NCBI RefSeq assembly: GCF_032191835.1
Contig: NC_083237.1
Location: 5,332,001 to 5,396,000, forward strand
Length of the DNA: 64,000 nt
Direction of reading: 5' to 3'
Source: Heteronotia binoei
Lineage: Eukaryota
Position numbers and translations under genes: made by a program. Below the pieces are notes generated by a model that made no database searches, was not told where the DNA came from, and saw only the letters and a list, made by a program, of their open reading frames with translations. Below, piece after piece: positions 2,095-51,200 of the stretch. Numbering within the stretch: the first letter of the stretch is position 1; each line of letters opens with the position of its first letter.

Positions 2095-3590
2095 GAGGGA
2101 CGGTGGCTCAGTGGCAGAGCAGCTGCATGGGAAGCAGAAGGTCCCAGGTTCAATCCCCGGCATCTCCAACTAAAAGGGTCCAGGCAAATAGGCGTGAATA
2201 ACCTCAGCTTGAGACCCTGGAGAGCCATGAATGGGGCTATGGCTCAGTGGTAGAGCATCTGCTCGGGAAGCAGAAGGTCCCAGGTTCAACCCCGGCATCT
2301 CCAACTCAAAAGGGTCCAGGCAAATAGGTGTGAAAAACCTCCGCTTGAGACCCTGGATAGCCACTGCTGGTCAGGGGAGGGACGGTGGCTCAGTGGTAGA
2401 GCATCTGCTTGGGAAGCAGAAGGTCCCAGGTTCAATCCCCAGCATCTCCAACTAAAAAGGGTCCGGACAAGTAGGCGTGAATAACCTCAGCTTGAGACCC
2501 TGGAGAGCCATGAATGGGGCTGTGGCTCAGTGGTAGAGCATCTGCTTGGGAAGCAGAGGGTCCCAGGTTCAATCCCTGGCATCTCCAACTAAAAGGGTCC
2601 AGGAAAGTAGGTGATGGAGATGGAGGGGGCTTGGCTCAGTGGTAAGAGCCACCTGCTTGGTAAGCAGAAGGTCCCAGGTTCAATCCCCAGCATCTCCAAC
2701 TAAAAGGGTCCAGGCAAGAAGGCATGAAAAACCTCAGCTGAAGACCCTGGAGAGCCACTGCTGGTCAATGGAGGGACGGTGCCTCAGTGGCAGAGCATCT
2801 GCTTGGTGAGCAGAAGGTCCCAGGTTCAATCCCCAGCATCTCCAACTAAAAAGGGTCCAGGCAACGAGGCATGAAAAACCTCAGCTGGAGATCCTGGAGA
2901 GCCGATTAGACTGAGTAGAGTCTGAGTAGACAGACTTTGATGGATGCAGGGGGTCTGATTCAGTAGAAGGCAAGTTCATATATGTTCATTTGAACCTGGC
3001 TTTAAGGGAGGGATGGTGGCTGAGTGGTAGAGCATCTGCTTGGTAAGCAGAAGGTTCCAGGTTCAATCCCCGGCATCTCCAACAAAAAAGGGTCCAGGCA
3101 AATAGGTGTGAAAAACCTCAGCTTGAGACCCTGGAGAGCCACTGCTGGTCAGGGGAGGGACGGTGGCTCAGTGGTAGAGCGTCTGCCTGGTAAGCAGAAG
3201 GTCCCAGGTTCAATCCCCGGCATCTCCAACAAAAAAGGGTCAGTGGTAGAGCATCTGCTTGGTAAGCAGAGGGTCTCTTCAATCCACTAAAAAAGGGTCC
3301 AGGAAAATAGGCGTGGAAAACCTCAGCTTGAGACCCTGGAGAGCTGCTGCCAGTCTGAGTAGACAAGATTGACTTTGATGGACTGAGTGGAGGGACGGTG
3401 GCTCAGTGGTAGAGGATCTGCCTGGTAAGCAGAAGGTCCTAGGTTCAATCCCCAGCATCTCCAACTAAAAAGGGTCAGTGAAAAACCTCAGCTTGGGACC
3501 CTGGAGAGCCGCTGCCAGTCTGAGTAGACAAGACTGACTTTGATGGACCCAGGATCTGATTCAGTAGAAGGCAGCTTCATATATTCCTAT
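2095..3590 (+). mobile_element. Tandem cluster of about 10 tRNA-derived SINE heads or partial copies (family unnamed here)
   Basis: Repeated GGGACGGTGGCTCAGTGGTAGAGCATCTGC...GGTTCAATCCC (A and B boxes) plus a shared body. Other copies at about 18045-18252 (+), 24415-25015 (-), 52893-53105 (+), 61845-62060 (-). Confidence 0.85.
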
Positions 3591-17361: not shown

Positions 17362-20300
17362 TAGACAGCACTTTTATAGACCAATGGAAAGAATTCAGTG
17401 AGTTTTAATTAATTTAAAAAAAAAAATAAGTTGCTGTCCTTGATGGGAACCCCTTCCCTTTGCGGAGTCCCAAAGGAGGCCTTTCATAAAAGGAAGAAGC
17501 TGCTAAGGATTGACTGTTAACCCGGCCTCTTTGGACAGCGGGGCTGTCCTTGCTTCCTTGTGGATCACATTGGGGAAAAGTGATGGCCTTTGTGGGTCAG
17601 CCTCTGTAGCCGCAGGATCCACAAGATGCTGCCGCCCTGGCATTTGAGGGCTAGGCTTCAAGTAGGAAGACAGACCCCCGTGGCACAGAGTGTTAAAGCT
17701 GCAATACTGCAGTCCTAAGCTCTGCTCACGACCTGAGTTTGATCCCTGGTGGAAGTTGGGTTTTCAGGTAGCTGGCTAGAGGTTGACTCAGCCTTCCATC
17801 CTGCTGAGGTCAGTCAAATGAGTCCCCAGCTTGCTAGGGGGAAAGTGTAGAGAACTGGGGAAGGCAATGGCAAACCACCCCGTCAAAAGTCTGCCGTGAA
17901 AACGTGAAAGCGACGTCACCCCAGAGTCAGAAACGACTGGTGCTCGCACAGGGGACCTGACCTTTCTTTTCTTTCAAGTAGGAAAGGATAAACCACAAGG
18001 ACTTGACGCCCCAAGTGCAGTGAGGTGACAAAAGCATGTCCAGCCCAAGGGAGGGACGGTGGCTCATTGATAGAGCATCTGCTTGGTAAGCAGAAGGTCC
18101 CAGGTTCAATCCCCGGCATCTCCAAAAAAGGGTTCAGGCAAAAAGGTGAAAAACCTCAGCTTGAGACCCTGGAGAGCCGCTGCCAGTCTGAGTGGACAAT
18201 ACTGACTTTGATGGACCGAGGGTCTGATTCAGTATAAGGCAGCTTCATATGTTCTCCACTGGCTCTTCTTTCAAAAGTGCTCTTCCAAAGATAAGAGAAG
18301 CCATGTTGGATGAGGCCAGTGGCCCATCCAGTCCAACACTTCGTGTCACACAGTGGCAAAAAAAACCAGGTGCCATCAAGAGGTCCATCAATGGGGCCAG
18401 GGCACTAGAAGTCTTCACACTGTTGCCCCCTCAAGCACCAAGTGTCATGAGCCCTGACACCAAGAACCTAAGAGAAGCCATGTTGGATGAGGCCAGTGGC
18501 CCATCCAGTCCAACACACTGTGTCACATAAGGACATAAGAGAAGCCATGTTGGATGAGGCCAGTGGCCCATCCAGTCCAACACTCTGTGTCACACAGTGG
18601 CAAAAAACTCCAGGTGCCATCAAGAGGTCCATCAATGGGGCCAGGACACTGCAAGCCCTCCCACTGTTGCCCCCCAAGCACCAAGTGTCATGAGCCCTGA
18701 CACCAAGAACATAAGAGAAGTCATGTTGGATCAGGCTACTGGCCCATCCAGTCCAACACTGTGTCACACAGTGGCCAAAAAAACCCAGGTGCCACCAGGA
18801 GGTCCATCAGTGGGGCCAGGACACTACAAGCCCTCCCGCTGTTGCCCCACAAGCACCAAGAATACAGAGCATCCCTGCCCCAGACAGAGAGTTCCAACAA
18901 CACCCTGTAGCTAATAGCCACTGATGGACCTCTGCTTCAGATGCTGATCCAATCCCCTCTTGAAGCTGGCTATAATTGTAGCTGCCACCATCTCCTGTGG
19001 CAGTGAATTCCATGTGTTAATCGCCCTTTGGGTGAAGATGTCTCCAGGGCTGCTGGAGGTGGGTAGGTTTAGATCATTTGCACTCGATTTGGGACCGGCT
19101 AATGCCGCCTCTCCCAATCCCGCCCAAATAGCCTAGTAGCGGTCCATCTGAATAAAATGCACTGTGGTCGTGGACAGCCAGTGTTCCATCTAAGCTGAGT
19201 TAGCGTGAGCTAGCTCACAGATTTTTAGCCTCCAGCTCACACATTTTTGTCTCAACCCAGAGCGCATTTCATTTCTTCAGTAGCGCATGACTTTAATACC
19301 AGGAGCTCACAAAGTAGACTTTTTGCCCACAAGACTGCAGCTTAGAAGGCACTTTGATTGTGGCATCCGGCCTTTCGCTTTTCCTCCGTTCTCAGGGGCA
19401 CGGCTTATGGGCAGACATGCCTTGGAACACATTAATCAAAGGGCTCGGAAGGCATTTTCTCTTTTTAAAAATCTCCTTTGGGTTTCGTATCTCAGCCTTT
19501 CCCCTTTCTGCTACTTTCCCCCCGTTTCTGGGCTCAGGAGACAATTCTTGGTGCTCTTAGTGGGCTTGGGTCTGGTCCTTCAACACCGCAAGCGAGTATA
19601 GAGTGACTCCAGCCTCCTTTGCCAACAGCTGCATCTTTCGCTTCTCTGAAGAAAGATCCCAGGTTTTCTGGCAAAAATAGCAGGCATCTTGCACAGAACT
19701 GAGAACTTGCCAAAGAAGAACCGAGAACTTGCCATTCTTCTCTCAAAGAATGCTATTTTTTTTTTTTGCCAGCGAATTCAGCTCCTGCGATGGAAGGCCG
19801 GGGATGTCACAGATCATGGGGTTAGTTAACATTTCTCCCTCTTCCCCCCTCACTCGTTGATAGAGATTTCATTATTGGACAAGCCCAGAGGGGCAGCCCT
19901 TCCGCTTTTCTTGCAGATTGTCTGTCCATGGGAGGAGGTCTCTTGGGCATCCACGTTTGTTCCACAGTTTCTGTGACTGAGTCTTTAGCTGAATAAAGGC
20001 ACTTGCTGTCTTTTCGCCGGCTGTGTTTTCAGGTGTTTTGAAGATGATGATATTGGATTTATATCCCCCCCTCCACTCCGGAGAGTCTCAGAGTGGCTCA
20101 CAATCTCCTTTCCCTCCCCCCCCCCCAACAGACACCCCTGTGAGGTAGATGAAGATATTGGATTTATATCCCGCCCTCCACTCCAAAGAGTCTCAGAGCG
20201 GCTCACAATCTCCTTTCCCTTCCTCCCCCACAACAGACACCCTGTGAGGTAGATGAAGATATTGGATTTATATCCCGCCCTCCACTCCGAAGAGTCTCAG

Positions 20301-21870: not shown

Positions 21871-24800
21871 ATTTTATGAACATTTGTAGCAAGGGAGAAA
21901 CTTGTGAATCACTGCTCGCTTCTTCAGATAGATACAGCTAGAATGTGATATATAAGGACAGATGAACTCATCCTAGCCATATCTGAGGAAGTGAGCAGTA
22001 ACTCCCAAAAGCTTCTCCCCCACCACAAACTTCATTAGTCCTTTAAAGTGCTGCTGGTCTCTCGTTCTTTTCTACTGCTGCTGCTGCTCGCCTTAATGCA
22101 GTATGACCTAAGGAAAGTTCCTCTCTTGACAATTGCCACTCATTTGCTTGACATATAAAACGAAAGAGGTACCACATCAAGAAAGGGCACATGAGAGGAC
22201 CCTTGGGCTCTATTTCCTCTTTTGTGTTCCAGGATCTTGGCCATAGAACACAACCAGAGAATCCGAGAGTTGGAAGGGACCTCCAGTCATCTAGTCCAAC
22301 CTCCTGCGCAATGCAGGAAACTTACAAACACCTCCCTCTAAATTCGCAGGATCTCCATTGCTGTCAGATGGCCATCTAGCCTCTGTTGAAAACCTCCAAG
22401 GAAGGAGAGCCCAGGAGAGCCAGTTTTGGTGTAGTGGTTAAGTTATCTGGGAGAACCGCGTTTGATTCCCCAATCCTCCACTTGCACCTGTTGGAATGGC
22501 CTTGGGTCAGCCATAGCTCTGGCAGAGGTTGTCCTTGAAAGGGCAGCAGCTGTGAGAGCCCTCTCTAGCCCCACCCACTCACAGGGTGTCTGTTGTGGGG
22601 GAGGAAGGTAAAGGAGATTGTAAGCCGCTCTGAGACTCTTCGGAGTGGAGTGGCGGGATATAAATCCAATATCTTCTTCTTCTTCTTCTTAAAAACATAG
22701 AATCCGAGAGTTGGAAGGGGCCTCCAGGGTCATCTAGTCCAGCCCCCTGCACAATGCAGGAAACTCACAAACACCTCCCCCTAAATTCACAGGAGCTTCA
22801 TTGCAGTCAGATGGCCATCTAGCCTCTGTTTGAAAACCTCCAAGGAAGGAGAGCCCAGTTAAAACATAGAATCCTAGAGTTGGAAGGCACCTCCAGGGTC
22901 CTCTAGTCCAACCGCAATGCAGGGAACTCACAAACACCTCCCCCTAAATTCACAGGATCTTCATCGCCTAACCTCTGTTGAAAAACCTCCAAGGAAGGAG
23001 AGCCCACAACCTCCCGAGGAAGCCTGTTCCACTGAGGAACGGCTCTAACGTCAGGAAGTTCATAGAATCATAGAGCTGGAAGGGGCCTCCAAGGTCATCT
23101 AGTCCATCCCCCTGTACAATGCAGGAAACTCACAAACACCTCCCCCTAAATTCACAGGATCTCCATTGCTGTCAGGTGGCCATCTAGCCTCTGTTGAAAA
23201 ACCACCAAGGAAGGAGAGCCCAGTTAAAACATAGAATCCTAGAGTTGGAAGGGACCTCCAGGGTCATCTAGTCCAACCCCCTGCACAATGCAAGAACTTC
23301 ACAAACACCTCCCCCTACACAAACTCCCAGTGACCCCTGCTCTGTGCCCAGAAGATAAGAACAAACAAAACAACTGTGTTATACAACTACTACGTAAATT
23401 TGTCTTTTTATAAATAAACTTTTATCACTAAATTTGTGTTGCTGAAGAACTACAGAAGACACCAGGATATCTTTATTTCTTCTTGATGGTCAATATACTG
23501 AGTTAATATCCCAGGTAAGTATCTTGTAGCAGTATTCGCCTCCCAGAGTCCGTGTGTGGAGTGGGCGGCATACAAATTTAAGGTAAAATAAAATAAATAT
23601 TCAATGAGTTCACCGTTCAAATTATGTTCTATTTTCTCTCTCCTTAGGGATAGAATCCCACATAGGCTGTGAAGGACGATGGAACGTTGAAATGCTTAGA
23701 TGTTTCCCCAAGGGGAGGTTGAAATACTTTTGTGTTTCCTGACATGTCACAGTCACAGTCTCTGAATTGCACTCCCACACTTCCTCTCAGTTTCAAAAGC
23801 TGATAAAGTAGAATATTTATAAAAATTACAAAGTTACTGTTCTATAATACAGTTGCTTTGTTTGCTGTTAGTTTCTGCACCGTGTTCTGCCTGTATAACT
23901 TCCATGCCCAGAAGATTGCTAAAAACCTCCAGGATTCCTGGCCAATCTGACCCAGAGAAAATTGCTGCCCGACCCCAAAGTGGCCATCAGCATTTCCCTG
24001 GGCGTGGAAGAAAGAGTCACTAGAACTGAGCCCTTCCTGCCCTCCTTCTCATGAGCTAATTCACAGAATTGACTTCTTCAGAGGATGGGGCACGTCTCCT
24101 CCACTGACCAGGGACTCACTATTCTTTTTGCTTTATGTATTTATTTGCTTCATTTAAATCTCACCTTTCTCCCTCACGGGGATCTGAAGCAACTTCCATC
24201 CTTCCCCTCTCCGTTTTATCCACACAACAACCCTGCGAGGGAGGTGAGGCTGAGAGTATGTGACCAGCCCAGGGTCACCCAGCAAGCTTTCATAGTGTCT
24301 GTGCCAGGCAGACCCTAGTCAGACACTCTGAAGTGCTCCGTCACACTGGCCAGAGCACCACGACAGATACCCCCCCTTCCTTCCCTAAACTAAGTCTTGT
24401 TCTTCACAACTCTGTGAACATATGAAGCTGCCTTATACTGAATCAGACCCTGGGTCCATCAAGTCAGTCTTGTCTACTCAGACTGGCAGCAGCTCTCCAG
24501 GGTCTCAAGCTGAGGTTTTTCACACCTCCTTGCCTGGACCCTTTTTTGTTGGAGATGCCAGGGATTGAACCTGGAACCTTCTGCTTACCAAGCAGATGCT
24601 CTGCCACTCAGCCACCATCCCTCCCTTAAAGCCAGGTTCATATGAACATATATGAACCTGCCTTCTACTGAATCAGACCCCCTGCATCCATCAAAGTCAG
24701 TATTGTCTACTCAGACTCTACTCAGTCTAATCGGCTCTCCAGGATCTCCAGCTGAGGTTTTTCATGCCTCGTTGCCTGGACCCTTTTAGTTGGAGATGCC

Positions 24801-25344
24801 GGGGATTGAACCTGGGACCTCCTGCTTCCCAAGCAGATGCTCTGCCACTGAGCCACCGTCCCTCCCCAGACCAGCAGTGGCTCTCCAGGGTCTCAAGCTG
24901 AGATTTTTCACACCTGCTTGCCTGGACCTTTTTGAGTTGGAGATGCCGGGGATTGAACCTGGTACCTTCTGCTCACCAAGCAGATGCTCTAGCACTGAGC
25001 CACTGTCCCTCCCCAAACAGACAGTATGCCACAGGCTGGGACCCAAGGCCTGCGTTTCCTCTAAGCTACGTGCCTGAGCAGCTGCTTGGTAACACCAGCA
25101 GCCACTAGCGGGCTGGGTCTAAACATATTGGTTGCCAGGAGACACAGGGGGCCCACCCACAACTATAAGGCTGCCATTTAATTTCTATCGAAAATAACTA
25201 AGATTTTCAAAAAATATATAAAAGTGGAAAAAAGGTACAATTAAAACTTCTGCAAAATGTACTGTATATATTTTTAGTAATTACAGTGTTACCTATATTG
25301 TACATTTTACTGGCAGTCTGCAGTAGATATTAAATGTCAATACA

Positions 25345-26836: not shown

Positions 26837-27030
26837 CAACGTTCCCTCTAAGCTGCAGAGTCTTGTGAGCAAAAATTCTACTTTGTGAGCGACTGGCCTT
26901 AAAGTTGGGAGCTGCCGCATCAACGAGTGCGCTCGGGGGTCGTCCTTCCTGAGCGAAGACAAAAATGTGTGAGCTGGAGGCTAAAAATCTGTGCGCTCGC
27001 TCACGCTAACTCAGCTTAGAGGGAACACTG
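26837..27030. mobile_element. hAT-type MITE (about 194 bp)
   Basis: TIRs CAACGTTCCCTCTAAGCTG / CAGCTTAGAGGGAACACTG with a perfect 8-bp TSD GTTATAAG. Other copies near 890, 19180, 37519, 38530, 49533-50125, 50436. Confidence 0.88.
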
Positions 27031-35600: not shown

Positions 35601-38600
35601 AACCAGAGTGCCAGTTCCAGGCAATGAGAAGACCAGTTGTTTTAAATTAACCAATACTGTAAGGGGTCAGTTATCAATAAAAATACAATACTCTCTAACC
35701 TTTTTGGTTTGCGTGTTCTGCTTTGAATAAAGAAGAAAAAAAAAAACTTCATCTGCTGATCCAAAAGAAAAATACCCCAACCCAGTCTGCATGATGCTTT
35801 TTAAAAAATTAGGGTTCCACAATTTCCTTCATAAGGAAATGCAAATAATTGTGTTTTTTGTGGAATGCAATTGTTTTATAGCCCCACCCTTTAAAAAAAA
35901 AGCACCTGGAAATTCCTGGATAGCAGCTAACATCTGTTCACAGCACAGAACTTGGCTATAGCAGGTCTTTGTCTCCCATCACCTTCGTTTAAAAAAAAAA
36001 AATCTCTCCGAAGAAAAGTTCTGGAGAACGAGAAAGCTGACATTTGTTACATACCTTTTGTTTGGGCTTAATAACAGGTATTATATGGTCTGTGTTCTAT
36101 ATTGAAATAAAGCAGATTAAGGCCATGCGTTCTGAGATACCTCTTTGAGAGTGCTATGCCTCTTTAAATGATAACTAAATTTTATTCCAGCATTAATTTT
36201 TGGTAGTCTGGCATCCAGAAGATGATGATATTGGATTTATACCCTGCCCTCCACTCCAAATCTCAAAGCAGTTTAGTGTCCTTTCCTCCCTCCCCCCCAC
36301 CCCGACAAAAGACACTCTGTGAGGCGGGTGGGGCTGAGAGAGCTCTCCCAGAAGCTGCCCTTTCAAGGACAGAGGCTCAGAGCGGCCTACAAACTCCTTT
36401 CCCTTCCTCCCCCACGCCAGACACCCTGTGAGGTGGGTGGGAGTGAAAGAGTTCTCCCAGAAGCTGCCCTTTCAAGGACAGAGGCTCAGAGCGGCTTACA
36501 ATCTCCTTTCCCTTCCTCCCCCACAACAGACACCTTGTGAGGCGGGTGGGGCTGAGAGAGCTCCCCCAGAAGCTGCCCTTTCAAGGACAGCTCTGCGAGA
36601 ACTATGGCTAACCCAAGGCCATTCTGGTTTTCATTTATGATAGAATAATGCATTGGTCTGCAAAAGGCTGCAGCCTTCTGTGTTTTAGTTGCTGGCTTGA
36701 TAAAGGCCAGAATTAAAAATGATTATTTAAATTATCCATTTTTTAAAAAAAAATTAGTGTTATAGCTAGAGTTGTCAACCTCCAAGTGGAACTTGATACT
36801 CTCCCAGGATTACAGCTGCTCCCCAGATGAGATCAGTTCCCATGGAAAAGATGGGTGCTTTGAAGGATAGTTCTGGCTGGTTTTGCATCAGGGGGTGTGG
36901 CCTGATATGCAAATGAGCTCCTGCTCAACAAAAAAGCCCTGTGTGAAACAATGGTGATGCCCAGGAGGTGTGGCCTAATATACAAATGAGTTCCTGATGG
37001 GCTTTTTCTAAAACCTGCCCCCCCCCCCGGATATATTCCTCTGAGGTCCTCTCTCCCCAGATCCTGCCTTCTCTAGGCTCCAACCCTGAAGCTACAGGAA
37101 TTTCCTAACCTGGAGTTGGCAAGCCTAGTTATAGCCTAGCTTTCTCAATGAGATTCAAGGCAGGCTAGCTACAGGGTAAAAGCAATATGCTCATACAGTG
37201 TGGAATCTTCAGTAAACCATGGAATGCTATAGGATTAAAAGGAAATGTTTGTTCTATTGCTGTTATTCTCAGGCCCTGGCAATTTCATAGGATTGGCTCC
37301 TGAGCTAGCTCAGGCTATGCCAGCTCTTATCCATTGGTCAAAAAGGTGATTGCAAAGATGCAGAATGAGGACCTGAAGAGTGAAGCAAATAAATATGTCG
37401 AAATAGGAGACTGGTGTGAAAACTTACCCTCCTTCATTGTGGAATACTAAGAGTAATTAACTGAAACCTGTTGCACTCCGTACGTCTTCTCGCAGGCATG
37501 GAGGTTACGACCAACCAGTGTTCCCTCTAAGCTGAGTTAGCATGAGCTAGCTCACAGATTTTTAGCTTCCAGCTCACACATTTTTGTCTTAGCTCAGGAA
37601 GGATGACCCCAGAGCACACTAACTTATGCTGTAGCTCACACCTTTAATCCCAGTAGCTCACAAAATACAATTTTTGCTCACAAGACTCTGCAGCTTAGAG
37701 GGAAGATTGCTAACAGCATCCTTTTGTTTGATGTAGAAGAAGATATTGGATTTATATCTTGCCCTCCCCTCTGAAGAGTCTCAGAGGGGCTCACAATCTC
37801 CTTTCCCTTCCTCCCCAACAATAGACACCCTGTGAGGTAGATGAAGATATTGGATTTATATCCCGCCCTCCACTCCGAAGAGTCTCAGAGAGGCTCACAA
37901 TCTCCTTTCCCTTCCTCCCCCACAACAGACACCCTGTGAGGTTGGTGGGGCTGGAGAGGCTTTCCCAGCAGCTGTCCTTTCAAGGACATCTCTGCGAGAG
38001 CTATGGCTGACCCAAGGCCATGCCAGCAGGTGCAAGTGGAGGAGTGGGGAATCAAACCCGGTTCTCCCAGATAAGACTCCACACACTTAACCACTACACC
38101 AAACTGGCTCTCCCATGTAGGATAAAGGTTGTGCAGTATTACGTCTCCTCTGTCACCAGATCAGGGGGAAAAAATCATTTCAATATTCACTGCATTACAT
38201 CACAATCACTATTCTAAATGAAATAAAATAAATAGGATGTATAACCCTTCTTGCTGAGAATACATACGGTATGTATGAACTGAATGAGTTTAGCGTACAT
38301 AGTAAGAAAGCAATCCCTCATAAATCCTGGGGGTGGGTTGTTTTGAGTGTTGTAATGTCCTTCCAGTACATTTTGTGGGTAGCCTCAAAGGAGTTGTTGT
38401 ACTGCAAAGGAACTTCAAGTGCAGACTGGAAAGGGAAATTGCTGAATTACAAGTTATCACGACACTTGGAACAACCCCCTCTCACAGGATTTAACAGGGA
38501 TATTGCTTTCTTAATACCTCACGACCAATATTCCCTCTAAGCTATGGAATCTTGTGAGCAAAAATTCTGCTTTGTGAGAGACTGTCATTAAAAGACATGA

Positions 38601-43775: not shown

Positions 43776-44480
43776 GTAGAACAAAATAGGAGTCGATTGC
43801 ACCTTTAAGACCCACCTGGTTTTATTCAGAACGTTAGCTTTCGTGTGCATGCACACTTCTTCAGGTACAGTAAGCAGAACCACATATAGCTGGTGGGGTT
43901 TGGAATACAAAGTGGCACAAAGTTAAAATCCAATATCTGAATAGTAAATCTCTCTGATACTCATAGTTCCCTTTTGTTAGGCGTTAGGATTAATTGAGAA
44001 ATATAAATCCAAGCGGGCAGCCGTGTTGGTCTGAAGTAGTAGAACAAAATAGGAGTCGATTGCACCTTTAAGACCAACTTAATTTTATTCAGGACGTCAG
44101 CTTTCGTGCGCATGCACTCTTCTTCAGACGAGGAATGAGGTACAGTAAGTAGAGCCACATATAGCTGGTGGGGTTTGGAATACAAAGTGGCACAAATTTA
44201 AAATCCAATAGCTGAATAGTAAATCTCTCTGATACTCATAGTTCCCTTTTGTTAGGCGTTAGGATTAATTGAGAAATATAAATCCAAGCGGGCAGCCGTG
44301 TTGGTCTGAAGTAGTAGAACAAAATAGGAGTCGATTGCACCTTTAAGACCAACTTAATTTAATTCAGGACGTCAGCTTTCGTGCGCATGCACTCTTCTTC
44401 AGACGAGGAATGAGGTACAGTAAGCAGGACCGCATATAGCTGGTGGGGTTTGGAATGCCAAGTGGCACAAAGTTAAAACC
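43776..44480. repeat. About 275-bp tandem repeat (about 2.7 units) of a Penelope-like terminal segment
   Basis: GTAGAACAAAATAGGAGTCGATTGCACCTTTAAGACC recurs at 43776, 44039, 44314. The Penelope assignment rests on resemblance to reptile PLE ends and is tentative. Confidence 0.6.
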
Positions 44481-44698
44481 CAATAGCGGAACAGTAAAAT
44501 TAACAAATTCAGAAAACCTTTGATCTGGGTTGAATTAGCATGCGAAACCATAAAACAGTAACATGTCAGAATGTGAGAATGTCTGTTAATTAGTCTATTG
44601 CTGATAAACCTGGGTCAAAAAGAAGGTATTTCTTTCCCAGAAGTTTTTCCTGGCCAACTAATTGACCTTTTATCGCGAGGGCCAACTCGGCAACGGTG

Positions 44699-45068
44699 AT
44701 TGGCTGAGAGCAAAGCCCCCCTTCCAATGACAATGCGCTTCTCTCATTCTCATTCAAAAATAACAGAACGTGCTAAGTTGTCAACCAATGAGGAAGGGCC
44801 AACGTTTGGGAAAGTAGTTTCGTGCGCTTTATTCTCTTATCGTTACTATTTGGCGGGGGTTTCTTGCCAGCAGGCCAATAGACTGAACAAGGGTGGGAAG
44901 TTCCCATTTGCGCAACAGGGAAGGGGGCGTAACCTGGAGTTTGCAGAGGAAGCCAAGTTTCTCTTTTGCAAAAAGTTTGCTTGGAGGCGGTTCCTGAGAT
45001 CTCCTGCAGCTGAGAGACGGAGCCTCTTCCGGAGCAGCAAAGCTGAGCCTAGGAGAGGACCGGTAAGC
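44699..45068 (+). promoter_or_regulatory. CCAAT-rich promoter-like segment with candidate non-coding first exon and splice donor
   Basis: ATTGG 44699, CCAAT 44724, 44785, 44875; CpG-rich non-repetitive sequence; CG|GTAAGC donor at 45063. Confidence 0.5.
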
Positions 45069-46337
45069 ACGCTTGCGGGTGGCGCTTTGGGGTTTCGGCG
45101 GTGGACGGACCCTCCTTTCTCCGAAAGTTTATCGGAGGCAGAGAAATCGACTGGGAGGCTGGAAGAGGGCTGGTCGCGAGCTCCCCGCACCCTCCGGGTC
45201 TAGGAACTCCCTCGCAGATCGCTTCCAGTTTGGTATCGTGGTTAAGTGCGCGGACTCTTATGTGGGAGAACCGGGTTTGATTTCTCACAGCTCCACATTG
45301 CAGCTGCTGGAATGGCCTTGGGTCAGCCAGAACACTCGCAGAGGTTGTTCTTGAAAGAGCAGCTTCTGGGAGAGCCCTCTCAGCCCCAGCCAGTTTGGTG
45401 TAGTGGTTAAGTGCGCGGACTCTTATCTGGGAGAACCAGGTTTGATTCCCCACTCCTCCACTTGCACCTGCTGGAATGGCCTTGGGTCAGCCAGAGCTCT
45501 CTTATCTGGGAGAACCGGGTTGGATTCCCCACTCCTCCACTTGCACCTGCTGGAATGGCCTTGGGTCAGCCAGAGCTCTCTTATCTGGGAGAACCGGGTT
45601 GGATTCCCCACTCCTCCACTTGCACCTGCTGGAATGGCCTTGGGTCAGCCAGAGCTCTCTTATCTGGGAGAACCGAGTTTGATTCCCCACTCCTCCACTT
45701 GCAGCTGCTGGAATGGTCTTGGGTCAGCCATCGCTCTGGCAGAGGTTGTCCTTGAAAGGGCAGCTGCTGAAAGAGTTCTCTCAGCCCCACCCACCTCACA
45801 GGTTGTCTGTTGTGGGGGAGGAAGGGAAAGGATACTGTGAGCAGCTCTGAGATTTGGAGTGGAGGGCGGGATATAAATCCAGTATCCAATCCACCCACCT
45901 CCCAGGGTGTCTGGGGTGGGGAGAAGGTAGAGAGCCAGTTTGATGTAGTGGTTAAGTGGGTTTGATTCCCCACTCCTCCACTTGCAGCTGCTGGAATGGC
46001 CTTGGGTCAGCCATAGCTCTTGCTAAGTGGTTAAGTGTGCAGATTCCTATCTGGGAGAACCGAGTTTGATTCCCTGCTCCTCCACTTGCAGATGCTGGAA
46101 CGGCCTTGGGTCAGCCAGAGCTGTTGCAGGAGTTGTTCTTGAAAGGACAGCTGCTGCAAGAGCTCTCACAGCCCCACCCACCTCACAGGGTGTATGTTGT
46201 GGGGGAGGAAGATAAAGGAGATTGTGAGCCGCTCTGAGACTCTTGAGATTCAGAGTGAAGGGCAGGATATAAATGCAATATTTTCTTCTTCTTCCTGAGA
46301 GACAGTACTTTGGACGGAAGTCTCCTTGGCTGTGCAG

Positions 46338-48218
46338 ATGGCCCACAGCTTCGAGGCCTTTGAGCGGGACGTCCAGCGGGTCACGGAGGCCCTCTCGCAA
46401 GAAGCCATGGCGAGTCGTTGGCCGCCTTCATCCATTTCCCAGCGCTACCAGGACAACAGAGACGGAACGGTCAGGGAGATCCTAGATAGATCCCCGCCCT
46501 GCCTGATCCCTCTGGATCTGCTGCACCGCTATTTCTCGGACGTGTTTAATCGAGACGACGCCAGGGGCGGCGGGCCCCGGCCAGAAAACCTGCCCCGGCT
46601 TCCCCGCGTGGAGTCCCACAACGTCCTGATGGAGCCCGTCACCCCGGAAGAAGTGAAAGCCATGTTCAAGCGCAAGAAGAACTCCAGCCCCGGCGTAGAT
46701 GGGATCCGCTTCCGCCAGCTGAAAAAGTGGGACCCGGAAGGCAGGAAACTGACGGACGTCTTGGAGAGATGCAGGCAGTTCGGGCGCGTCCCGGCCGACT
46801 GGAAGAGAGCCAGGACTTTCCTCAAATTCAAGCAGGGTGACCTCGGCGACCCCAGCAACTGGCGACCCCGGCAACTCTGCAACACCATATACAAGCTCTA
46901 TGCCAGGTGCCTGGCTGCCCGCATCACCCTGTGGGCCCAGGAAGGGGAAACCCTCAGTCCCCAGCAGAAAGGCTTCCAGGCCCAAGTGGGCATCGCCGAG
47001 CACCGCTTCCTCGTGCAGGCGGTGCTGAACGTGGCCCGCGAAAACAGGGGGGAGTGCGCCGTGGCCTTCCTGGACCTTGCCGACGCCTATAGCTCCATCC
47101 CGCGCTGCCACATCTTTGAGACGCTGGAGGAGTTTGGCATGCCCGAAGAGTTCGTGGACCTCCTCCGGGAGCTGTACGACGGGTGGACCGTAGAGGTGAA
47201 GAATAAGGGAGAAAAGGCAGAGTTCCCATTCCGGACGGGACTCATGCAAGGGTGCCCCCTGAGCCCCATCCTGTTCCAGCTGGGCATAGAGCCGCTCCTC
47301 CGTTGCATCGGTGGCCAGTCGCGCGGCTTTGGCCTGCATGGTGTAAGAGTCGGCGTGCTGGCTTACACCGATGACTTAGCGCTGGTTGCCGAGAGTGCCG
47401 AAGAGCTGCAAAGCATGCTGGACGACGCCACGGCCGCCGCTGACTGGATCGGCCTGCGCTTCAAGGCTGGGAAGTGCAGATCGCTCCACTGCAGAGGCGG
47501 AATCTGTCGGCTGACCCAGTTCAGAGTCCAGGGGGAGGCCATTGCCTTCCTGAGGGAAAGAGAAACAGTCCAGTACCTGGGAAGGCCCATCAGCTTCCGA
47601 AGGCAGCCGGAGAACCTCGCTTCTCACTTTGAGGACAAGTTGGACAGGATCGGGGAATCGCGGCTCAGTCGCTGGCAGAAAGCTAACGTGATGATGTGGA
47701 ATCTGTTGCCGACTACTCTGTCCGAGCTGAGAGAGAGGCACGTCCCGAATAAAGAGCTGTGCAGGATCAAGTGCGAAATCGCAAATGCGCTCTCCCAGTG
47801 GGACCCCGACGATCAGAGACGGGGCAAAGACCTGAAGGTGCAACAGCTGAGCGACATCGAAGTGGTCAGCCACGCCGCCTTCCTGCTCTCCAGCCCCGAC
47901 AGGGTCGTGAAAGCTGTAGCCCTCGGCGCCCTTCGGGGCATCGTCCACGAGAGCTTTGCCCAGGATCCTACCGATGAAGACTTGGCTTCATACCTGAACG
48001 GGTACCGGGAAGACCAGACTCATCACCGCAGTGGGACTTCCACTTCCTTGTGGGCCCGGGCCAGATATGCTACTCGGCGACTCAACAAACTCATTGGCTG
48101 TCAGTGGAGAGAGTGCAACGGTGAACTGCGATTGGAAGTGCTCAGACGCCTCATAGAGGAACGCAAGAACCTGGCACGTACTCTCAAACGTGCTGTGAAA
48201 AACTACTTACCAATGTAA
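46338..48218 (+). CDS. Reverse transcriptase-only protein derived from an R2/NeSL/Utopia-clade non-LTR retrotransposon (626 aa from ATG 46338)
   Basis: Uninterrupted ORF with motifs SPGVDG, SNWRP, QQKGF, FLDLADAY, GLMQGCPLSP, LAYTDDLAL (YTDD at 47364-47375), GLRFKAGKC and YLG, then SRWQK and LWARAR typical of RLE-clade elements. No CCHC knuckle or PD..D endonuclease before the stop. Confidence 0.9.
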   Translation: MAHSFEAFERDVQRVTEALSQEAMASRWPPSSISQRYQDNRDGTVREILDRSPPCLIPLDLLHRYFSDVFNRDDARGGGPRPENLPRLPRVESHNVLMEPVTPEEVKAMFKRKKNSSPGVDGIRFRQLKKWDPEGRKLTDVLERCRQFGRVPADWKRARTFLKFKQGDLGDPSNWRPRQLCNTIYKLYARCLAARITLWAQEGETLSPQQKGFQAQVGIAEHRFLVQAVLNVARENRGECAVAFLDLADAYSSIPRCHIFETLEEFGMPEEFVDLLRELYDGWTVEVKNKGEKAEFPFRTGLMQGCPLSPILFQLGIEPLLRCIGGQSRGFGLHGVRVGVLAYTDDLALVAESAEELQSMLDDATAAADWIGLRFKAGKCRSLHCRGGICRLTQFRVQGEAIAFLRERETVQYLGRPISFRRQPENLASHFEDKLDRIGESRLSRWQKANVMMWNLLPTTLSELRERHVPNKELCRIKCEIANALSQWDPDDQRRGKDLKVQQLSDIEVVSHAAFLLSSPDRVVKAVALGALRGIVHESFAQDPTDEDLASYLNGYREDQTHHRSGTSTSLWARARYATRRLNKLIGCQWRECNGELRLEVLRRLIEERKNLARTLKRAVKNYLPM

Positions 48219-51200
48219 GGAGCTGTCATGGGCCAGGCAACCCAAGGATTCATGTGCCGGGCTCTTCCAAAAGTAGCTGTGGGGATGCTCACAATCCCTG
48301 CTTGTCTCCTAGAGAGATTCCATCCCACACAATGCCGCTAGCAGCACTCGATGCTGTGGAACATGGCACAAGGCAGCAGCATTAGTGCCTTCTAAATGGA
48401 ATCCCAGTTCTACTCTTGATCTCAGCCAAAAGACCGAGAATCCCAGTCTTGAAAACAAAGTCACCCAGAGCCACGTTATGCCTGGATTCGAACGCTGGCT
48501 CGGAAGAGACGTTCTATGAATGAAGTGAAACAACGAGCGATGATGCGGAATTTCTCAACTTTGTTTAACGTACGCTTGTTTTCTCTTTTAATATGAGCTT
48601 TTTTTTTTCCCCTTTAAGGAACATGGCCGTTAGATGTGCAGCAGATAGATGTTAATCTCTGCTTTTTAAGTTTGCAGTCGCAGTTTCTGGATTGAAGTGA
48701 TGTTTATATCCCGTGATGTGCCTCAAGTATCTTCATTAAATTACTCATCGTTATTACTAACTCCACCTTAATGTGTTTAACAGGCTGCTTTTCCATTTCT
48801 GCATCTGAACGTGGGAACGTATCCTGCCTGCATCTTGTTTGGAGCTGTGTGCTGGTGGTACATGATTTTGCAGTACGTGTATGCAGTGAGGGGGGGGGGG
48901 GGGATCCCAAAAATTTAAAAAAAGTTATCTCTGGTATTTGCTTCAGTAGTTCATCTCGATGGGTAGTCCTCAGTCTGTCTGGAGCAGCCGAAAAGAGCAG
49001 GAGTCAAGGAGCACTTGAAAGACAGACAAAATTTGTGGCAGGAGCTTTTGTGAGTTGCTTCTCACCTCACAGTGAGCCCCGCGGCGCAGAGTGGTAAAGC
49101 TGCAGCACTGCAGTCGGAGCCCTCTGCTCACGACCTGAGTTCGATTCCAGCGGAAGCCGGTTCAAGTAGCTGGCTCCAGGTTGACTCAGCCTTCCACCCT
49201 TCCGAGGTCGGTCAAATGAGCCCCCAGCTTGCTGTGGGGGAAAGTGTGGATGACTGGGGAAGGCAATGGCAAACCACCCCGTAAAAAGTCTGCCGTGAAA
49301 ACGTTGTGAAAGCAGCATCACCCCAGAGTCGGAAATGACTGGTGCTTGCACAGCGGACCTTTCCTTGCCTCTCACTTCTTCAGATACTTTGGGTTATCCC
49401 ATACTGAAGGGATCTGAAGAAGCAAGCAGTGACCCAAAAGCTCTTACCTGCCACAGACTTCTTGCTCTTTTCTACTTCCAGCTCATTTTGGTTTTGTTTC
49501 CCCTAAAAAGATCACATTATTGCACTGCAACCAACGTTCCCTCTAAGCTGCAGTTTTGTGAGCAAAAATTCTACTTTGTGAGCTCCTGGCAGGCCTCGGC
49601 TTCAGCAGAAGCTCACAGGAGTGCAGCTCCTGAACCTTTCTGAGGGTCTTGCAGGCCTGGAATAAAATGATATCAAAAATGTGCAATAGTGCCATAAGAA
49701 AAGGGAAGCTGTCCTCTCGCCGCATGCAAGAAACAGTAGAATAGCTAAAAGAGGAACTAAGCTTGCAGACGCTTGCTGGAATAACACATTTAGTAAACGC
49801 ACCTAGGAAATGTCCTGAGAGCAGGAATGAAGAGGGCAAAACAGGCTTATGATAAAGGCTATTGCGCTAAGAGGCTAGTAACGTTAATGCCATATACGGA
49901 ATAGACTCTGCAGCCCCTCCTTGTTCCATATGTAAAATGGAACTTTAATGCCAGCAGCCCTGGCTACTGGTATTAAAGCTATGAGCTGCTGGCATTAACG
50001 TTGTGGGCAACTGCATAAATTATTGTGCTCCGGGGCCGTTTTCCCTGAGCTAAGACAAAAATGTGTGAGCTGGAGGCGAAAAAGCTATGAGCCAGCTCAC
50101 GCTAACCCCACTTAGAGGGAATGCTGCTCCCAAGTCTGCTGTCAAAGGAAGGCCTTGAAGAAGGCGGAAGGATTTGTAATGCTGCTTGCGTAGCACCCCC
50201 TGCCCCATGCTCTGAAATCTCTTTCAAGGGCAGGATTACCCTGAACAAAAAACCTGAGGGCAGGGGATGGCTCTTCCTCAGGAAATACAGGCTTCCGTTC
50301 GCTTGCGTGCTTAACAAATTGTTTTTCCCGTTCTGCACAGCCAAACGGAAGCCCTACTGGGCAATATGTCTACCTAGCTCCACCCACTTTCTAAAAGCAT
50401 TTAGCGGGCACCAGGAAAGGTGTCCAGGTTGGAGACAACGTTCCCTCTGAGCTGCAGAGTCTTGTGAGCAAAAATTCTACTTTGTGAGCTGCTGGCATTA
50501 AAGTGGTGAGCGACTGGGATAAATGAGTGTGCTCTGGGGCCATTTTTCCCGAGCGAAGAAAAAAATGTGTGAGCCGGAGGCTGAAAAGCTTACACTAACT
50601 CAGCTTAGAGGGAACGCTGGTTGAGGATTTCTGTACTATGTTGTCTGTCCTATAATGGAGCCCTGGTCTTTCTAGCAACTGACTTTAGGCAAGCCCTCAG
50701 CTTGGACCTTATATCTCTCATACAATGTTCCTTGAGAGAGAAGAGCCCTTTTATTTATTTGCAGAATTTGTATTCTGCTTTTCCACCCTTACAAGGGGGC
50801 CACCAGGGTGGTGAATCATTTTTTTAAAAAATTATTTAATTCACTGTCACCCTGTCTTTCTCCCCCGTGGGAACTTAAGGCAGCTTACATCATTTTCCTT
50901 TCCCCCACTTTCTCCTCACAACAACCCTGTGTGGTAGGTTAGGCGCTGAGAGAGTGTGGTGGGCTCAAAGTCACCAGCCGGCTTCCCTGACAGGGTAGGG
51001 ATTTGAACCTGGGTCTCGGATACTACTGCAGCACTTCCCACTGCATCACAAAGGGTTAAACAGGATTATGCTACATTTTAAAAGCATTGTTTTTCCCCCA
51101 TCCTGTTTAACATGCATTTTTAACAGTTTTGTACATATTTTCACACTTTTAATTGTTTTAATGATGTGTTCTGAACATGCATGATTAAAATATTTATTTT

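What the first reader, a model, noticed from the sequence alone, without database searches (positions are those of the whole stretch)
46338..48218. Candidate domesticated reverse transcriptase gene from an R2/NeSL/Utopia-clade retrotransposon, inside a histone cluster
Seen: 626 codons with no stop or frameshift. All three catalytic aspartates are present (FLDLADAY; YTDD at 47364-47375). Third positions are strongly G/C (e.g. gcc gag cac cgc ttc ctc gtg cag gcg gtg ctg), as in PER1 and the histones here, and many CpGs survive. The frame is closed by TGA at 46296-46298, so the N-terminal zinc fingers are absent, and it stops before the CCHC knuckle and restriction-like endonuclease. Known: RLE-clade elements need that endonuclease for TPRT, and Utopia elements normally sit in U2 snRNA genes; I see no U2 flank. 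Inference: motifs are diverged from what I recall of reptile Utopia proteins (NWRPRQL for NWRPISL, YTDD for YADD, a shortened segment before VVSHAAFLL), yet the frame is intact. A long-diverged but open, endonuclease-less copy is what purifying selection on a host RT-only or RNA-binding protein would leave.
Basis: partly seen in the sequence, partly recalled or inferred. Interest (0 to 1): 0.9.

Follow-up and report, generated by a model that had tools for sequence, protein, structure and literature searches.

The report
Endonuclease-less Utopia reverse transcriptase gene
A lizard genome carries an open 626-codon reverse transcriptase gene, cut down from a U2-targeting "Utopia" jumping element, whose truncated form is shared by at least four squamate species and has stayed open far longer than chance allows, so it is probably a host-kept gene, although copy number and shared position across species are still unproven.

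Summary
Window 46338-48218 (+) is an uninterrupted 626-codon RVT_1 ORF with all three catalytic Asp and no zinc-finger, CCHC or restriction-like-endonuclease (RLE) remains nearby.

Its nearest full-length relatives are true Utopia elements, flanked by U2 snRNA genes. Three other squamate proteins (a Logan contig at 61% identity, Anolis A0A803TJC4, Podarcis CAI5791446) share both truncation boundaries. They form one clade with it (99/98 support).

Evidence for selection:
- Against the 61% relative, omega is 0.53 (0.43-0.64).
- All ORF indels are multiples of 3, while the 3' flank diverges neutrally.
- A SINE cluster that is about 10% diverged has inserted into a leader that is contiguous in the relative. 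The ORF has therefore sat at this locus long enough that a neutral frame would be broken.
- RNA contigs from two or three studies cover the ORF and a 3' UTR ending 25 nt after ATTAAA.

Evidence against:
- Lineages 2.5-3.4% diverged differ mostly by nonsynonymous changes (24:5), and one carries a 1-nt deletion.
- There is no synteny with Podarcis within 10 kb.
- No close homologue of any of the four proteins turned up in the protein collection.
- Copy number was not measured.

Verdict: the domestication reading is partly supported (about 0.55).

The parts
46338..48218 (+). RT-only ORF, 626 codons plus TAA. The predicted protein contains NTE-1/NTE0, the RT fingers and palm, the thumb and the first part of the alpha-helical linker.
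   Evidence: AF2 model: pLDDT 91.7, pTM 0.91. Residues 28-626 align to R2Bm 8gh6_A residues 312-870, Z 36.7, rmsd 3.2.
47073..47075 (+). Motif A catalytic Asp (D246, in AFLDLADAY).
   Evidence: The position is invariant in 46 aligned relatives.
47364..47375 (+). Motif C, YTDD (D345, D346). The Thr replaces an Ala that is kept in at least 90% of relatives.
46297..46337 (+). Proximal 5' leader, alignable with the relative L001. The ATG sits at the same aligned position in both.
45183..45226 (+). Distal leader segment, homologous to L001 66-108. In L001 it is contiguous with the proximal leader; here the SINE cluster separates the two.
   Evidence: about 67% identity over 49 nt, including an exact 10-mer, and the match ends exactly at the SINE boundary.
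45227..46296 (+). Lineage-specific cluster of tRNA-derived SINE copies inserted into the leader. It is a dating marker, not part of the gene's ancestral structure. It ends in a TTC-rich tail.
   Evidence: The copy next to the ORF (46026-46290) is 10.9% from the majority of 13 copies in the window.
48219..48765 (+). 3' UTR-like flank. It is homologous to L001 up to about 48405 at neutral divergence. Contigs of X1 cover it to 48632 and contigs of X3 to 48765.
   Evidence: 66.5% identity, gaps of 1, 1, 2 and 8 nt. tables 2 and 8.
48735..48740 (+). ATTAAA, a candidate polyadenylation signal 25 nt before the point where the X3 contig leaves the window sequence (48765, after CA).
   Evidence: for the position, record 15. 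That the 21 unmatched letters are poly(A) is an inference.

Best explanation
The ORF is a host-retained ('domesticated') derivative of a Utopia non-LTR retrotransposon. An ancient copy lost the N-terminal DNA-binding zinc fingers, and lost everything after the first part of the linker (CCHC finger and restriction-like endonuclease). This RT-only form has since been inherited vertically in squamates as a low- or single-copy, single-exon gene. It is transcribed into a polyadenylated mRNA. The protein keeps the RNA-binding N-terminal extensions, a catalytically complete palm and the thumb. It should therefore bind RNA and synthesise cDNA from a 3'-OH supplied by something else, but it cannot choose or nick a DNA target, so it cannot carry out target-primed reverse transcription by itself. 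Shown here: domain content, the catalytic residues, the shared truncation, long-term frame and palm constraint, residence at this locus older than a SINE about 10% diverged, and RNA coverage. Inferred: polymerase activity, a benefit to the host, a single copy, and a single origin about 200 My ago. Constraint is weak outside the palm, and recent evolution is fast or relaxed.
For: (1) Shared architecture. P0001 (61% identity), Anolis P0021 and Podarcis P0023 begin and end within about 20 residues of the window protein's ends, and the stop of L001 lies at the same aligned position. Neither L001 nor the Podarcis locus has ZF or RLE remains. (2) One clade. UFboot/SH-aLRT support is 99/98, with topology ((window,P0001),(Anolis,Podarcis)). 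It is sister to U2-flanked Utopia elements. The AU test rejects the tested alternative, in which the window/P0001 pair groups with the Utopia elements to the exclusion of Anolis and Podarcis (p=0.0185). (3) Long-term selection. dN is 0.28, dS 0.53-0.70, and omega 0.53 with a bootstrap 95% interval of 0.43-0.64; omega in the palm is 0.34. ORF gaps are 3, 3, 18 and 21 nt, against 1, 1, 2 and 8 nt in 182 nt of 3' flank at 66.5% identity. Only 0.01% of neutral simulations stay open at half the observed divergence. (4) Selection on this locus. The SINE cluster interrupts a leader that is contiguous in L001, and the adjacent SINE is 10.9% from the family majority. The ORF has therefore stayed open in place through about 10% neutral divergence. 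(5) Low copy number. P0021 and P0023 have no close relatives among 5.8 billion clusters. Each read set shows one haplotype, or two in a short stretch of the 3' flank in X3, and X6 shares some variants with X3 and others with the window, as alleles do. Kojima and Jurka 2015 (PMC4640811) noted low copy number and undetectable termini for Anolis Utopia. (6) Transcription. X1 contigs tile 46365-48632, X3 contigs tile 46570-48765, and the unique flanks have zero depth. A control shows that the same runs hold the H1-H3 genes, so they behave like transcriptomes. (7) RT-only branches are 4-5 times longer than Utopia branches, and 12-20 of 68 family-invariant positions are lost while all three Asp are kept. 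This fits a changed function better than a self-propagating element.
Against: The listed differences between the window and X3 are 24 nonsynonymous to 5 synonymous, and between the window and X1 10 to 2, where neutral evolution predicts about 66:34. The X3 contig also has a 1-nt deletion in the G6 run at 47046-47051. Present-day amino-acid constraint in this genus is therefore not shown, and a null allele may segregate. The two deep RNA-seq runs have no reads over 46316-47844, and only depth 1-11 over 47845-48678. The Podarcis locus shares no genes or conserved blocks with the window within +-10 kb. No homologue closer than the four proteins themselves was found in the protein collection, which includes NCBI-annotated proteins. 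Copy number in this genome was not measured. Orthology with L001 rests on flank homology inside a 2.3-kb contig from an unknown species. The library type of X3 is not on record. Long-branch attraction could inflate support for the RT-only clade.
Confidence: 0.55

Rival explanations
1. It is a low-copy, RT-only retroelement lineage. In this reading a truncated Utopia derivative still propagates, either by endonuclease-independent insertion at DNA breaks or ends, or by borrowing the nuclease and targeting functions of full-length Utopia proteins. Selection among element copies keeps the ORF open. The window copy is one, possibly the source, copy.
For: There is no synteny between the Podarcis and window loci within 10 kb. 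Each member is an orphan in the protein collection. Differences among close lineages are as expected for copies decaying neutrally, and include a frameshift. X3 depth rises from 17 to 50-67 towards the 3' end, which resembles the profile of 5'-truncated copies. GC3 and CpG content are the same as in active Utopia elements.
Against: No second copy was seen anywhere: not in the window, not in 22 kb around the Podarcis gene, and not as close paralogues in the databases. Each read set shows one haplotype or allele-like pairs, with recombinant patterns. The control shows that X1 and X3 also hold low-copy histone genes, so their depth is not a copy-number signal. The copy predates a SINE about 10% diverged and is still open, which selection among copies does not explain. 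No target-site duplication was found. Losing 18-29% of family-invariant positions is unexpected for an element that depends on its own RT. No mechanism is known by which an RLE-clade RT without nuclease and DNA-binding domains could integrate.
Confidence: 0.2
2. It is a relic. The RT-only gene was kept by selection for most of squamate history, but it is no longer needed in this genus and has begun to decay. The window allele is still open only because too little time has passed.
For: The N:S ratios are 24:5 and 10:2, and one lineage carries a 1-nt deletion. In simulations, 15-38% of neutral descendants remain open after 1.5-3% divergence. Expression is very low or absent in the two deep RNA-seq runs. 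Omega is 0.65-0.84 outside the palm.
Against: Among the listed X3 differences, the palm core (codons 208-399) shows a single one, and it is synonymous, whereas 24 differences cluster in codons 95-207. That pattern looks like regional hypervariability or a mosaic haplotype rather than uniform decay. Only one indel lies in 1.9 kb of ORF, against at least three in 0.55 kb of 3' UTR among the same lineages. The X1 and window alleles are both open.
Confidence: 0.15
3. It is an ordinary dead copy: a young insertion of a currently active Utopia family, truncated at both ends, whose frame is open by chance.
For: The CpG and GC content is high and element-like, and there is no direct measure of copy number.
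Against: The closest full-length relative is only 45% identical. The same truncation occurs in four species. The locus is older than a SINE about 10% diverged. Flank homology with a relative at about 27% nucleotide divergence shows the arrangement is old.
Confidence: 0.03

Closest known systems
Utopia (U2 snRNA gene-targeting, RLE-encoding non-LTR retrotransposons; Kojima and Jurka 2015, PMC4640811)
   Same: The RT sequence falls in this lineage. The sister group (P0002/P0170, Chelydra P0003, Eretmochelys P0004) lies next to U2 snRNA genes and is 42-46% identical to the window protein. The paper lists Utopia in turtles, Anolis and Alligator, and notes low copy number and unfindable termini in Anolis.
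   Different: The window ORF has no N-terminal zinc fingers, no CCHC and no RLE, and no U2 target. Its protein branch is 4-5 times longer. It is a single-exon ORF of 626-712 aa ending inside the linker.
R2 retrotransposon protein (R2Bm 8gh6; R2Tg 9dou/9nl3)
   Same: These are the best matches among solved structures. phmmer gives E about 1e-34. VIA-align gives Z 36-38 over 520-570 residues, covering NTE-1/NTE0, the RT, the thumb and the start of the linker.
   Different: The protein ends at the equivalent of R2Bm residue ~870. That is before linker residues R901/D902, the CCHC finger (R922/R924) and the RLE (D996, D1009, K1026) named in PMC10499050. It has no ZnF/Myb domains and no 28S target.
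Cellular reverse transcriptases of retroelement origin (TERT; rvt genes of fungi and rotifers) - compared from my own knowledge
   Same: They are single-copy, endonuclease-free RT genes that are inherited vertically and keep the catalytic Asp residues.
   Different: They belong to different RT lineages, have no known link to RLE-clade LINEs, and are much better conserved. Function, copy number and synteny are unproven here.
[quoted passage not shown]
   Same: It is a LINE-derived host gene that evolves fast, with positive selection and repeated losses in some lineages (title and abstract).
   Different: L1TD1 derives from ORF1 (from my own knowledge), not from the RT, and it is found in mammals.
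Endonuclease-deficient retroelements (Athena-type Penelope-like elements at telomeres; mentioned in PMC3846280)
   Same: They have an RT without a nuclease and could persist by using free DNA ends.
   Different: They are multi-copy, associated with telomeres and of a different RT class. None of these features was seen here.

Membership tests
Utopia non-LTR retrotransposons | RT groups phylogenetically with U2-associated Utopia elements | tested here: met
   In the careful tree, the four RT-only proteins plus P0002/P0003/P0004 form a clade with 100/99 support. U2 snRNA lies at L004 9491-9681 (134.8 bits) and at L005 29-237 (61.6 bits).
Utopia non-LTR retrotransposons | C-terminal CCHC finger plus PD-(D/E)xK restriction-like endonuclease | tested here: not met
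   The ORF stops about 330 residues before the end of P0002. tblastn finds no remains downstream. The structural alignment ends at R2Bm residue 870.
Utopia non-LTR retrotransposons | Insertion in, or next to, a U2 snRNA gene | tested here: not met
   The Rfam gathering scan of the whole window finds no U2. There is none in L001 either.
Utopia non-LTR retrotransposons | N-terminal zinc-finger DNA-binding region | tested here: not met
   No tblastn match to the N-terminal 640 residues of P0005, or to P0170, in the window, L001 or L003.
Domesticated (host) gene derived from a transposable element | Single copy per genome | tested here: inconclusive
   There is one copy in the 64-kb window. Each read set shows one haplotype or allele-like pairs. 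The Anolis and Podarcis proteins are orphans. No whole-genome search was possible.
Domesticated (host) gene derived from a transposable element | Orthologues at the same genomic position in other species | tested here: inconclusive
   Flank homology with L001 extends on both sides to the ends of that contig, including across the SINE insertion. There is no shared neighbourhood with Podarcis within +-10 kb. The Anolis locus was not retrievable.
Domesticated (host) gene derived from a transposable element | Purifying selection on the coding sequence | tested here: inconclusive
   Met over the long term: omega 0.53 (0.43-0.64), 0.34 in the palm, frame-preserving indels, and an ORF still open after about 10% local neutral divergence. 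Not met over the short term: N:S of 24:5 and 10:2, and a 1-nt deletion in one lineage.
Domesticated (host) gene derived from a transposable element | Expression as mRNA and protein | tested here: inconclusive
   RNA-library contigs of X1 cover the ORF and 3' UTR but not the unique flanks, and the word index shows X2 (same species label) and X5 (a second species label) holding part of the ORF. X3 behaves like a transcriptome. Expression is near zero in two deep RNA-seq runs. The strand, the 5' end and translation are unknown.
Active reverse transcriptase (right-hand polymerase) | Catalytic Asp of motifs A and C and an intact palm, fingers and thumb fold | tested here: met
   D246, D345 and D346 are kept in all four RT-only proteins. 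The AF2 model is confident and superposes on R2 and LINE-1 RTs. Enzymatic activity itself cannot be tested with these tools.

The most novel reading that the evidence does not exclude
Squamates possess a second cellular reverse transcriptase besides telomerase. It would be a catalytically competent, endonuclease-free enzyme domesticated from a Utopia element in the squamate ancestor, roughly 200 My ago. Its frame and palm are conserved, while its N-terminal RNA-binding and fingers region evolves under diversifying selection, as expected for a factor in conflict with retroelements or viruses (for example by sequestering or copying their RNA).
Probability: 0.2. Interest if true: 0.9.

Novelty: new variant of a known kind. 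Interest (0 to 1): 0.72.

Why it matters
Host genes built from the reverse transcriptase of a LINE-type element are essentially unknown in vertebrates. [quoted passage not shown]

An RT that has shed both its DNA-targeting and its nuclease modules, yet kept its catalytic core open in several squamate lineages, raises a testable question: what does a free cellular RT do in an amniote? Candidates include defence, repair and regulation of its parent element.

Such a protein would also be a natural "minimal" R2-type RT, of interest to groups engineering R2 proteins for gene insertion. If instead it proves to be a mobile RT-only lineage, it would be an unusual case of a LINE persisting without an endonuclease.

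Tried and rejected
1. Multi-copy reading from depth. X3 depth (17 rising to 67 towards the 3' end, with zero in the unique flanks) first suggested hundreds of 5'-truncated copies in shallow DNA data. The control search showed that X3, X1, X2 and X5 also hold 15-31% of the words of the H1-H3 gene stretch. These sets are therefore gene- or transcript-enriched, and are about 2% diverged from the assembly even in histone genes. I dropped the depth argument.

2. SINE-tail targeting. Both the window and L001 have a SINE 3' end just upstream of the ORF, which suggested an element that inserts into SINE tails. This is rejected. The window sequence upstream of its SINE cluster matches the L001 sequence downstream of L001's own SINE, so the two SINE insertions are independent and at different positions.

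3. Spliced 5' exon. A donor near 45063 and an acceptor at 46298-46299 could not be tested. No reads cover 46316-46454 in the raw RNA runs, and the single read-laying run was deliberately started after the 79-bp tandem array.

4. Target-site duplications at the candidate boundaries: none found.

5. Synteny with Podarcis. blastn, tblastx, tRNA and Rfam scans of +-10 kb found only shared repeats.

6. Searches for close homologues of the Podarcis and Anolis proteins gave nothing above 42% identity. The Anolis gene is not on record as a contig.

7. GC3 and CpG content as host signatures: rejected, because Utopia ORFs look the same.

8. Uninformative look-ups: the ESM Atlas, earlier scan notes and a literature search for the SRA accessions.

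9. PER1 in the window: ten large ORFs between 4 and 21 kb gave no Pfam hit. I did not pursue it.
Full report
**Observation**

It runs from 46338 to 48218 on the + strand, ATG to TAA, 626 codons. The frame is closed upstream by TGA at 46296-46298.
- Pfam finds one RVT_1 domain, E=1.1e-31.
- Motif A (AFLDLADAY, D246 at 47073-47075) and motif C (YTDD at 47364-47375) are present. None of 20000 shuffles of the ORF stays open.
- The surrounding histone H1, H3 and H2A-like genes, three histone stem-loops, tRNA-Gly and a TAF9 exon are real. PER1 was not confirmed.
- There is no U2 snRNA in the window.
- tblastn with full-length relatives finds no zinc-finger, CCHC or endonuclease remains anywhere in the 64 kb.

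**What family it comes from**

The best matches among solved structures are R2 proteins (phmmer E about 1e-34). An AlphaFold model built on 46 relatives is confident (pLDDT 91.7, pTM 0.91). Its residues 28-626 superpose on R2Bm residues 312-870 (Z 36.7, rmsd 3.2).

Using the residues named in the R2Bm structure paper (PMC10499050), the protein keeps NTE-1/NTE0, the RT, the thumb and the first part of the linker. It ends before linker R901/D902, the CCHC finger and the RLE, and it has no N-terminal ZnF/Myb.

The closest full-length sequences (P0002/P0170 and turtle proteins, 42-46% identical) are true Utopia elements. U2 snRNA genes lie beside them in L004 and L005, as Kojima and Jurka described (PMC4640811).

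**The same truncated form exists in other squamates**

An exhaustive HMMER search and the word-index search found three proteins with the same architecture:
- P0001, 61% identical, on a 2.3-kb Logan contig (L001) from an unknown species.
- Anolis carolinensis A0A803TJC4 (P0021).
- Podarcis lilfordi CAI5791446 (P0023), a single-exon ORF with its own stop.

All start shortly before the same N-terminal motif and stop within about 20 residues after the same LK.A motif. Neither L001 nor the Podarcis locus has ZF or RLE remains.

In a careful ML tree the four form one clade (99/98) with topology ((window,P0001),(Anolis,Podarcis)), sister to the U2-flanked elements. The AU test rejects the alternative that groups the window/P0001 pair with the Utopia elements to the exclusion of Anolis and Podarcis (p=0.0185). 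This fits vertical descent from one truncated ancestor if the window species lies outside Lacertoidea plus Toxicofera; that condition and the time scale are from my own knowledge.

RT-only branches are 4-5 times longer than Utopia branches. Long-branch attraction is therefore a caveat.

**Long-term selection**

Between the window and L001, dN is 0.28 and dS 0.53-0.70. Omega is 0.53 by NG86, with a bootstrap 95% interval of 0.43-0.64.

| Region | omega |
|---|---|
| N-terminal part | 0.84 |
| Codons 95-207 | 0.65 |
| Palm | 0.34 |
| Thumb | 0.73 |
| C-terminal part | 0.47 |

Other evidence points the same way:
- All internal gaps in the ORF are multiples of three (3, 3, 18, 21). The 182-nt 3' flank is 66.5% identical, like third codon positions, and has gaps of 1, 1, 2 and 8 nt.
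- With substitutions alone, 0.01% of neutral simulations remain open at half the observed divergence.
- The four proteins keep all three catalytic Asp but only 48-56 of the 68 positions that are at least 90% conserved in full-length relatives (median 66).

The picture is a conserved catalytic core in a protein that is otherwise loosely constrained.

**This very locus is old**

The homology between the window and L001 continues 5' of the ATG (46297-46337). After skipping the 1.07-kb SINE cluster at 45227-46296, it resumes at 45183-45226, and this sequence is contiguous in L001. L001 has its own, separate SINE about 100 nt further upstream.

The SINE cluster therefore inserted into an existing leader in the window lineage. 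The SINE copy next to the ORF is 10.9% from the majority of 13 copies in the window, among the oldest sampled.

A neutral 1.9-kb frame would very probably be broken after that much divergence. Extrapolating gives about 0.2% survival from substitutions alone. Selection has therefore acted on this copy in place. That is what distinguishes a host gene from an ordinary insertion of a mobile family. No target-site duplication was found.

**Transcription and copy number**

- Word-index searches found the ORF in RNA libraries from one study (X1 and X2, plus X5 from a second species label) and in X3/X4, whose library type is unrecorded.
- When laid on 45760-49900, X1 contigs tile 46365-48632 and X3 contigs tile 46570-48765. 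The unique neighbouring stretches have zero depth.
- The X3 contig leaves the window sequence at 48765, after CA and 25 nt past ATTAAA (48735-48740). This fits a poly(A) site.
- Two deep 2026 RNA-seq runs show no reads over 46316-47844 and depth 1-11 over 47845-48678. Expression in those samples is very low or 3'-biased.
- A control search showed that X3, X2, X1 and X5 hold 15-31% of the words of the H1-H3 gene stretch. These sets behave like transcriptomes, and their depth is not evidence of many copies.
- Each data set shows one haplotype or allele-like pairs. X6 shares some variants with X3 and others with the window, as recombining alleles do.
- The Anolis and Podarcis proteins have no close relatives among 5.8 billion clusters.

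Copy number in this genome was nevertheless not measured.

**What argues against a constrained host gene**

- The X1 and X3 lineages carry the same species label as the window but are 2.5-3.4% diverged from it. Their listed differences are 10:2 and 24:5 nonsynonymous to synonymous.
- The X3 contig has a 1-nt deletion in the G6 run at 47046-47051.
- The X3 differences cluster in codons 95-207, while the palm shows a single synonymous change among those listed. This looks like a hypervariable region or a mosaic haplotype rather than uniform decay. Either way, present-day amino-acid constraint is not demonstrated, and a null allele may exist.
- The Podarcis gene has no histone, tRNA or other shared neighbours within +-10 kb.
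- No homologue closer than the four proteins themselves appeared in the protein collection.
- High GC3 and CpG content are shared with active Utopia ORFs and say nothing about domestication.

**Mechanism**

The protein should work like the polymerase half of an R2/Utopia enzyme. The N-terminal extensions would grip RNA, and the palm would carry out cDNA synthesis. It has no means to recognise or nick DNA, so it cannot perform target-primed reverse transcription alone. The domain content and catalytic residues are shown. Activity and any host role are inferred.

**Verdict**

| Reading | Probability |
|---|---|
| Host-retained Utopia-derived RT-only gene | about 0.55 |
| Low-copy endonuclease-less mobile lineage | 0.2 |
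| Former gene now decaying in this genus | 0.15 |
| Young dead copy | 0.03 |

The finding is a new variant of a known kind, and it deserves the genome-wide synteny, copy-number and codon-model tests listed under next steps.

Noticed in passing
window 55782-58544: A tandem array of 26 copies of a 106-bp unit (91% matches). The unit is the 3' part of the same tRNA-derived SINE, in reverse orientation, so a satellite has grown out of a SINE tail.
   Followed up: partly
window 2096-3463; also 18052-18124 and 24550-25009: Runs of tRNA-Pro(GGG)-like and tRNA-Thr(GGT)-like sequences spaced about 140-160 bp apart: nine in the first run and three on the minus strand in the last. Rfam scores are mostly 31-52 bits. 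They are either a tRNA gene array or amplified tRNA-derived repeat heads.
   Followed up: no
window 44690-44890 and 45062-45067: A cluster of CCAAT boxes (three direct, one inverted) lies about 380 nt upstream of the ATG once the SINE cluster is removed. A GGTAAG donor-like site follows. Together they could be the promoter and first exon of the RT gene, or a leftover divergent histone promoter.
   Followed up: no
window 43776-44498: A 275-bp tandem repeat, 2.7 copies at 92% matches, lies between the H2A-like gene and the RT locus.
   Followed up: no
window 45420-45737: A 79-bp unit repeated four times at 96% identity inside the SINE cluster. This is a young internal duplication of a SINE segment.
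   Followed up: no
window 47046-47051 and 48238-48289: The X3 contig lacks one G of a G6 run, which is a frameshift in that lineage. The X1 contig lacks 52 nt just after the stop codon. Three adjacent sites (48255, 48258, 48265) differ from the assembly in every read of X6 that covers them, and in the X3 contig.
   Followed up: partly
L004 9491-9681 and L005 29-237: Complete U2 snRNA genes lie directly beside the full-length Utopia ORFs of Chelydra serpentina and of an unidentified Logan sample. These are good reference loci for Utopia boundaries.
   Followed up: partly
L003 17045-17176 (-): A short RT fragment lies 5 kb downstream of the Podarcis gene. It matches P0002 (41% over 44 aa) but not P0023, so it is an unrelated old LINE remnant and not a second copy.
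   Followed up: yes
L001 2281-2303; window 27008-27030, 37516-37538, 49536-49550 and others: The L001 contig ends in a dispersed repeat head (GTTCCCTCTAAGCTG...). This head occurs many times in the window, in two places with 23/23 identity. The two genomes therefore share this repeat family as well as the SINE.
   Followed up: no
window 61325-61843: The TAF9 (TFIID-31kDa) match covers only residues 74-122 of this ORF, roughly nt 61541-61679. It is a single exon, with tRNA-His about 300 bp downstream of it on the other strand (61984-62055).
   Followed up: no
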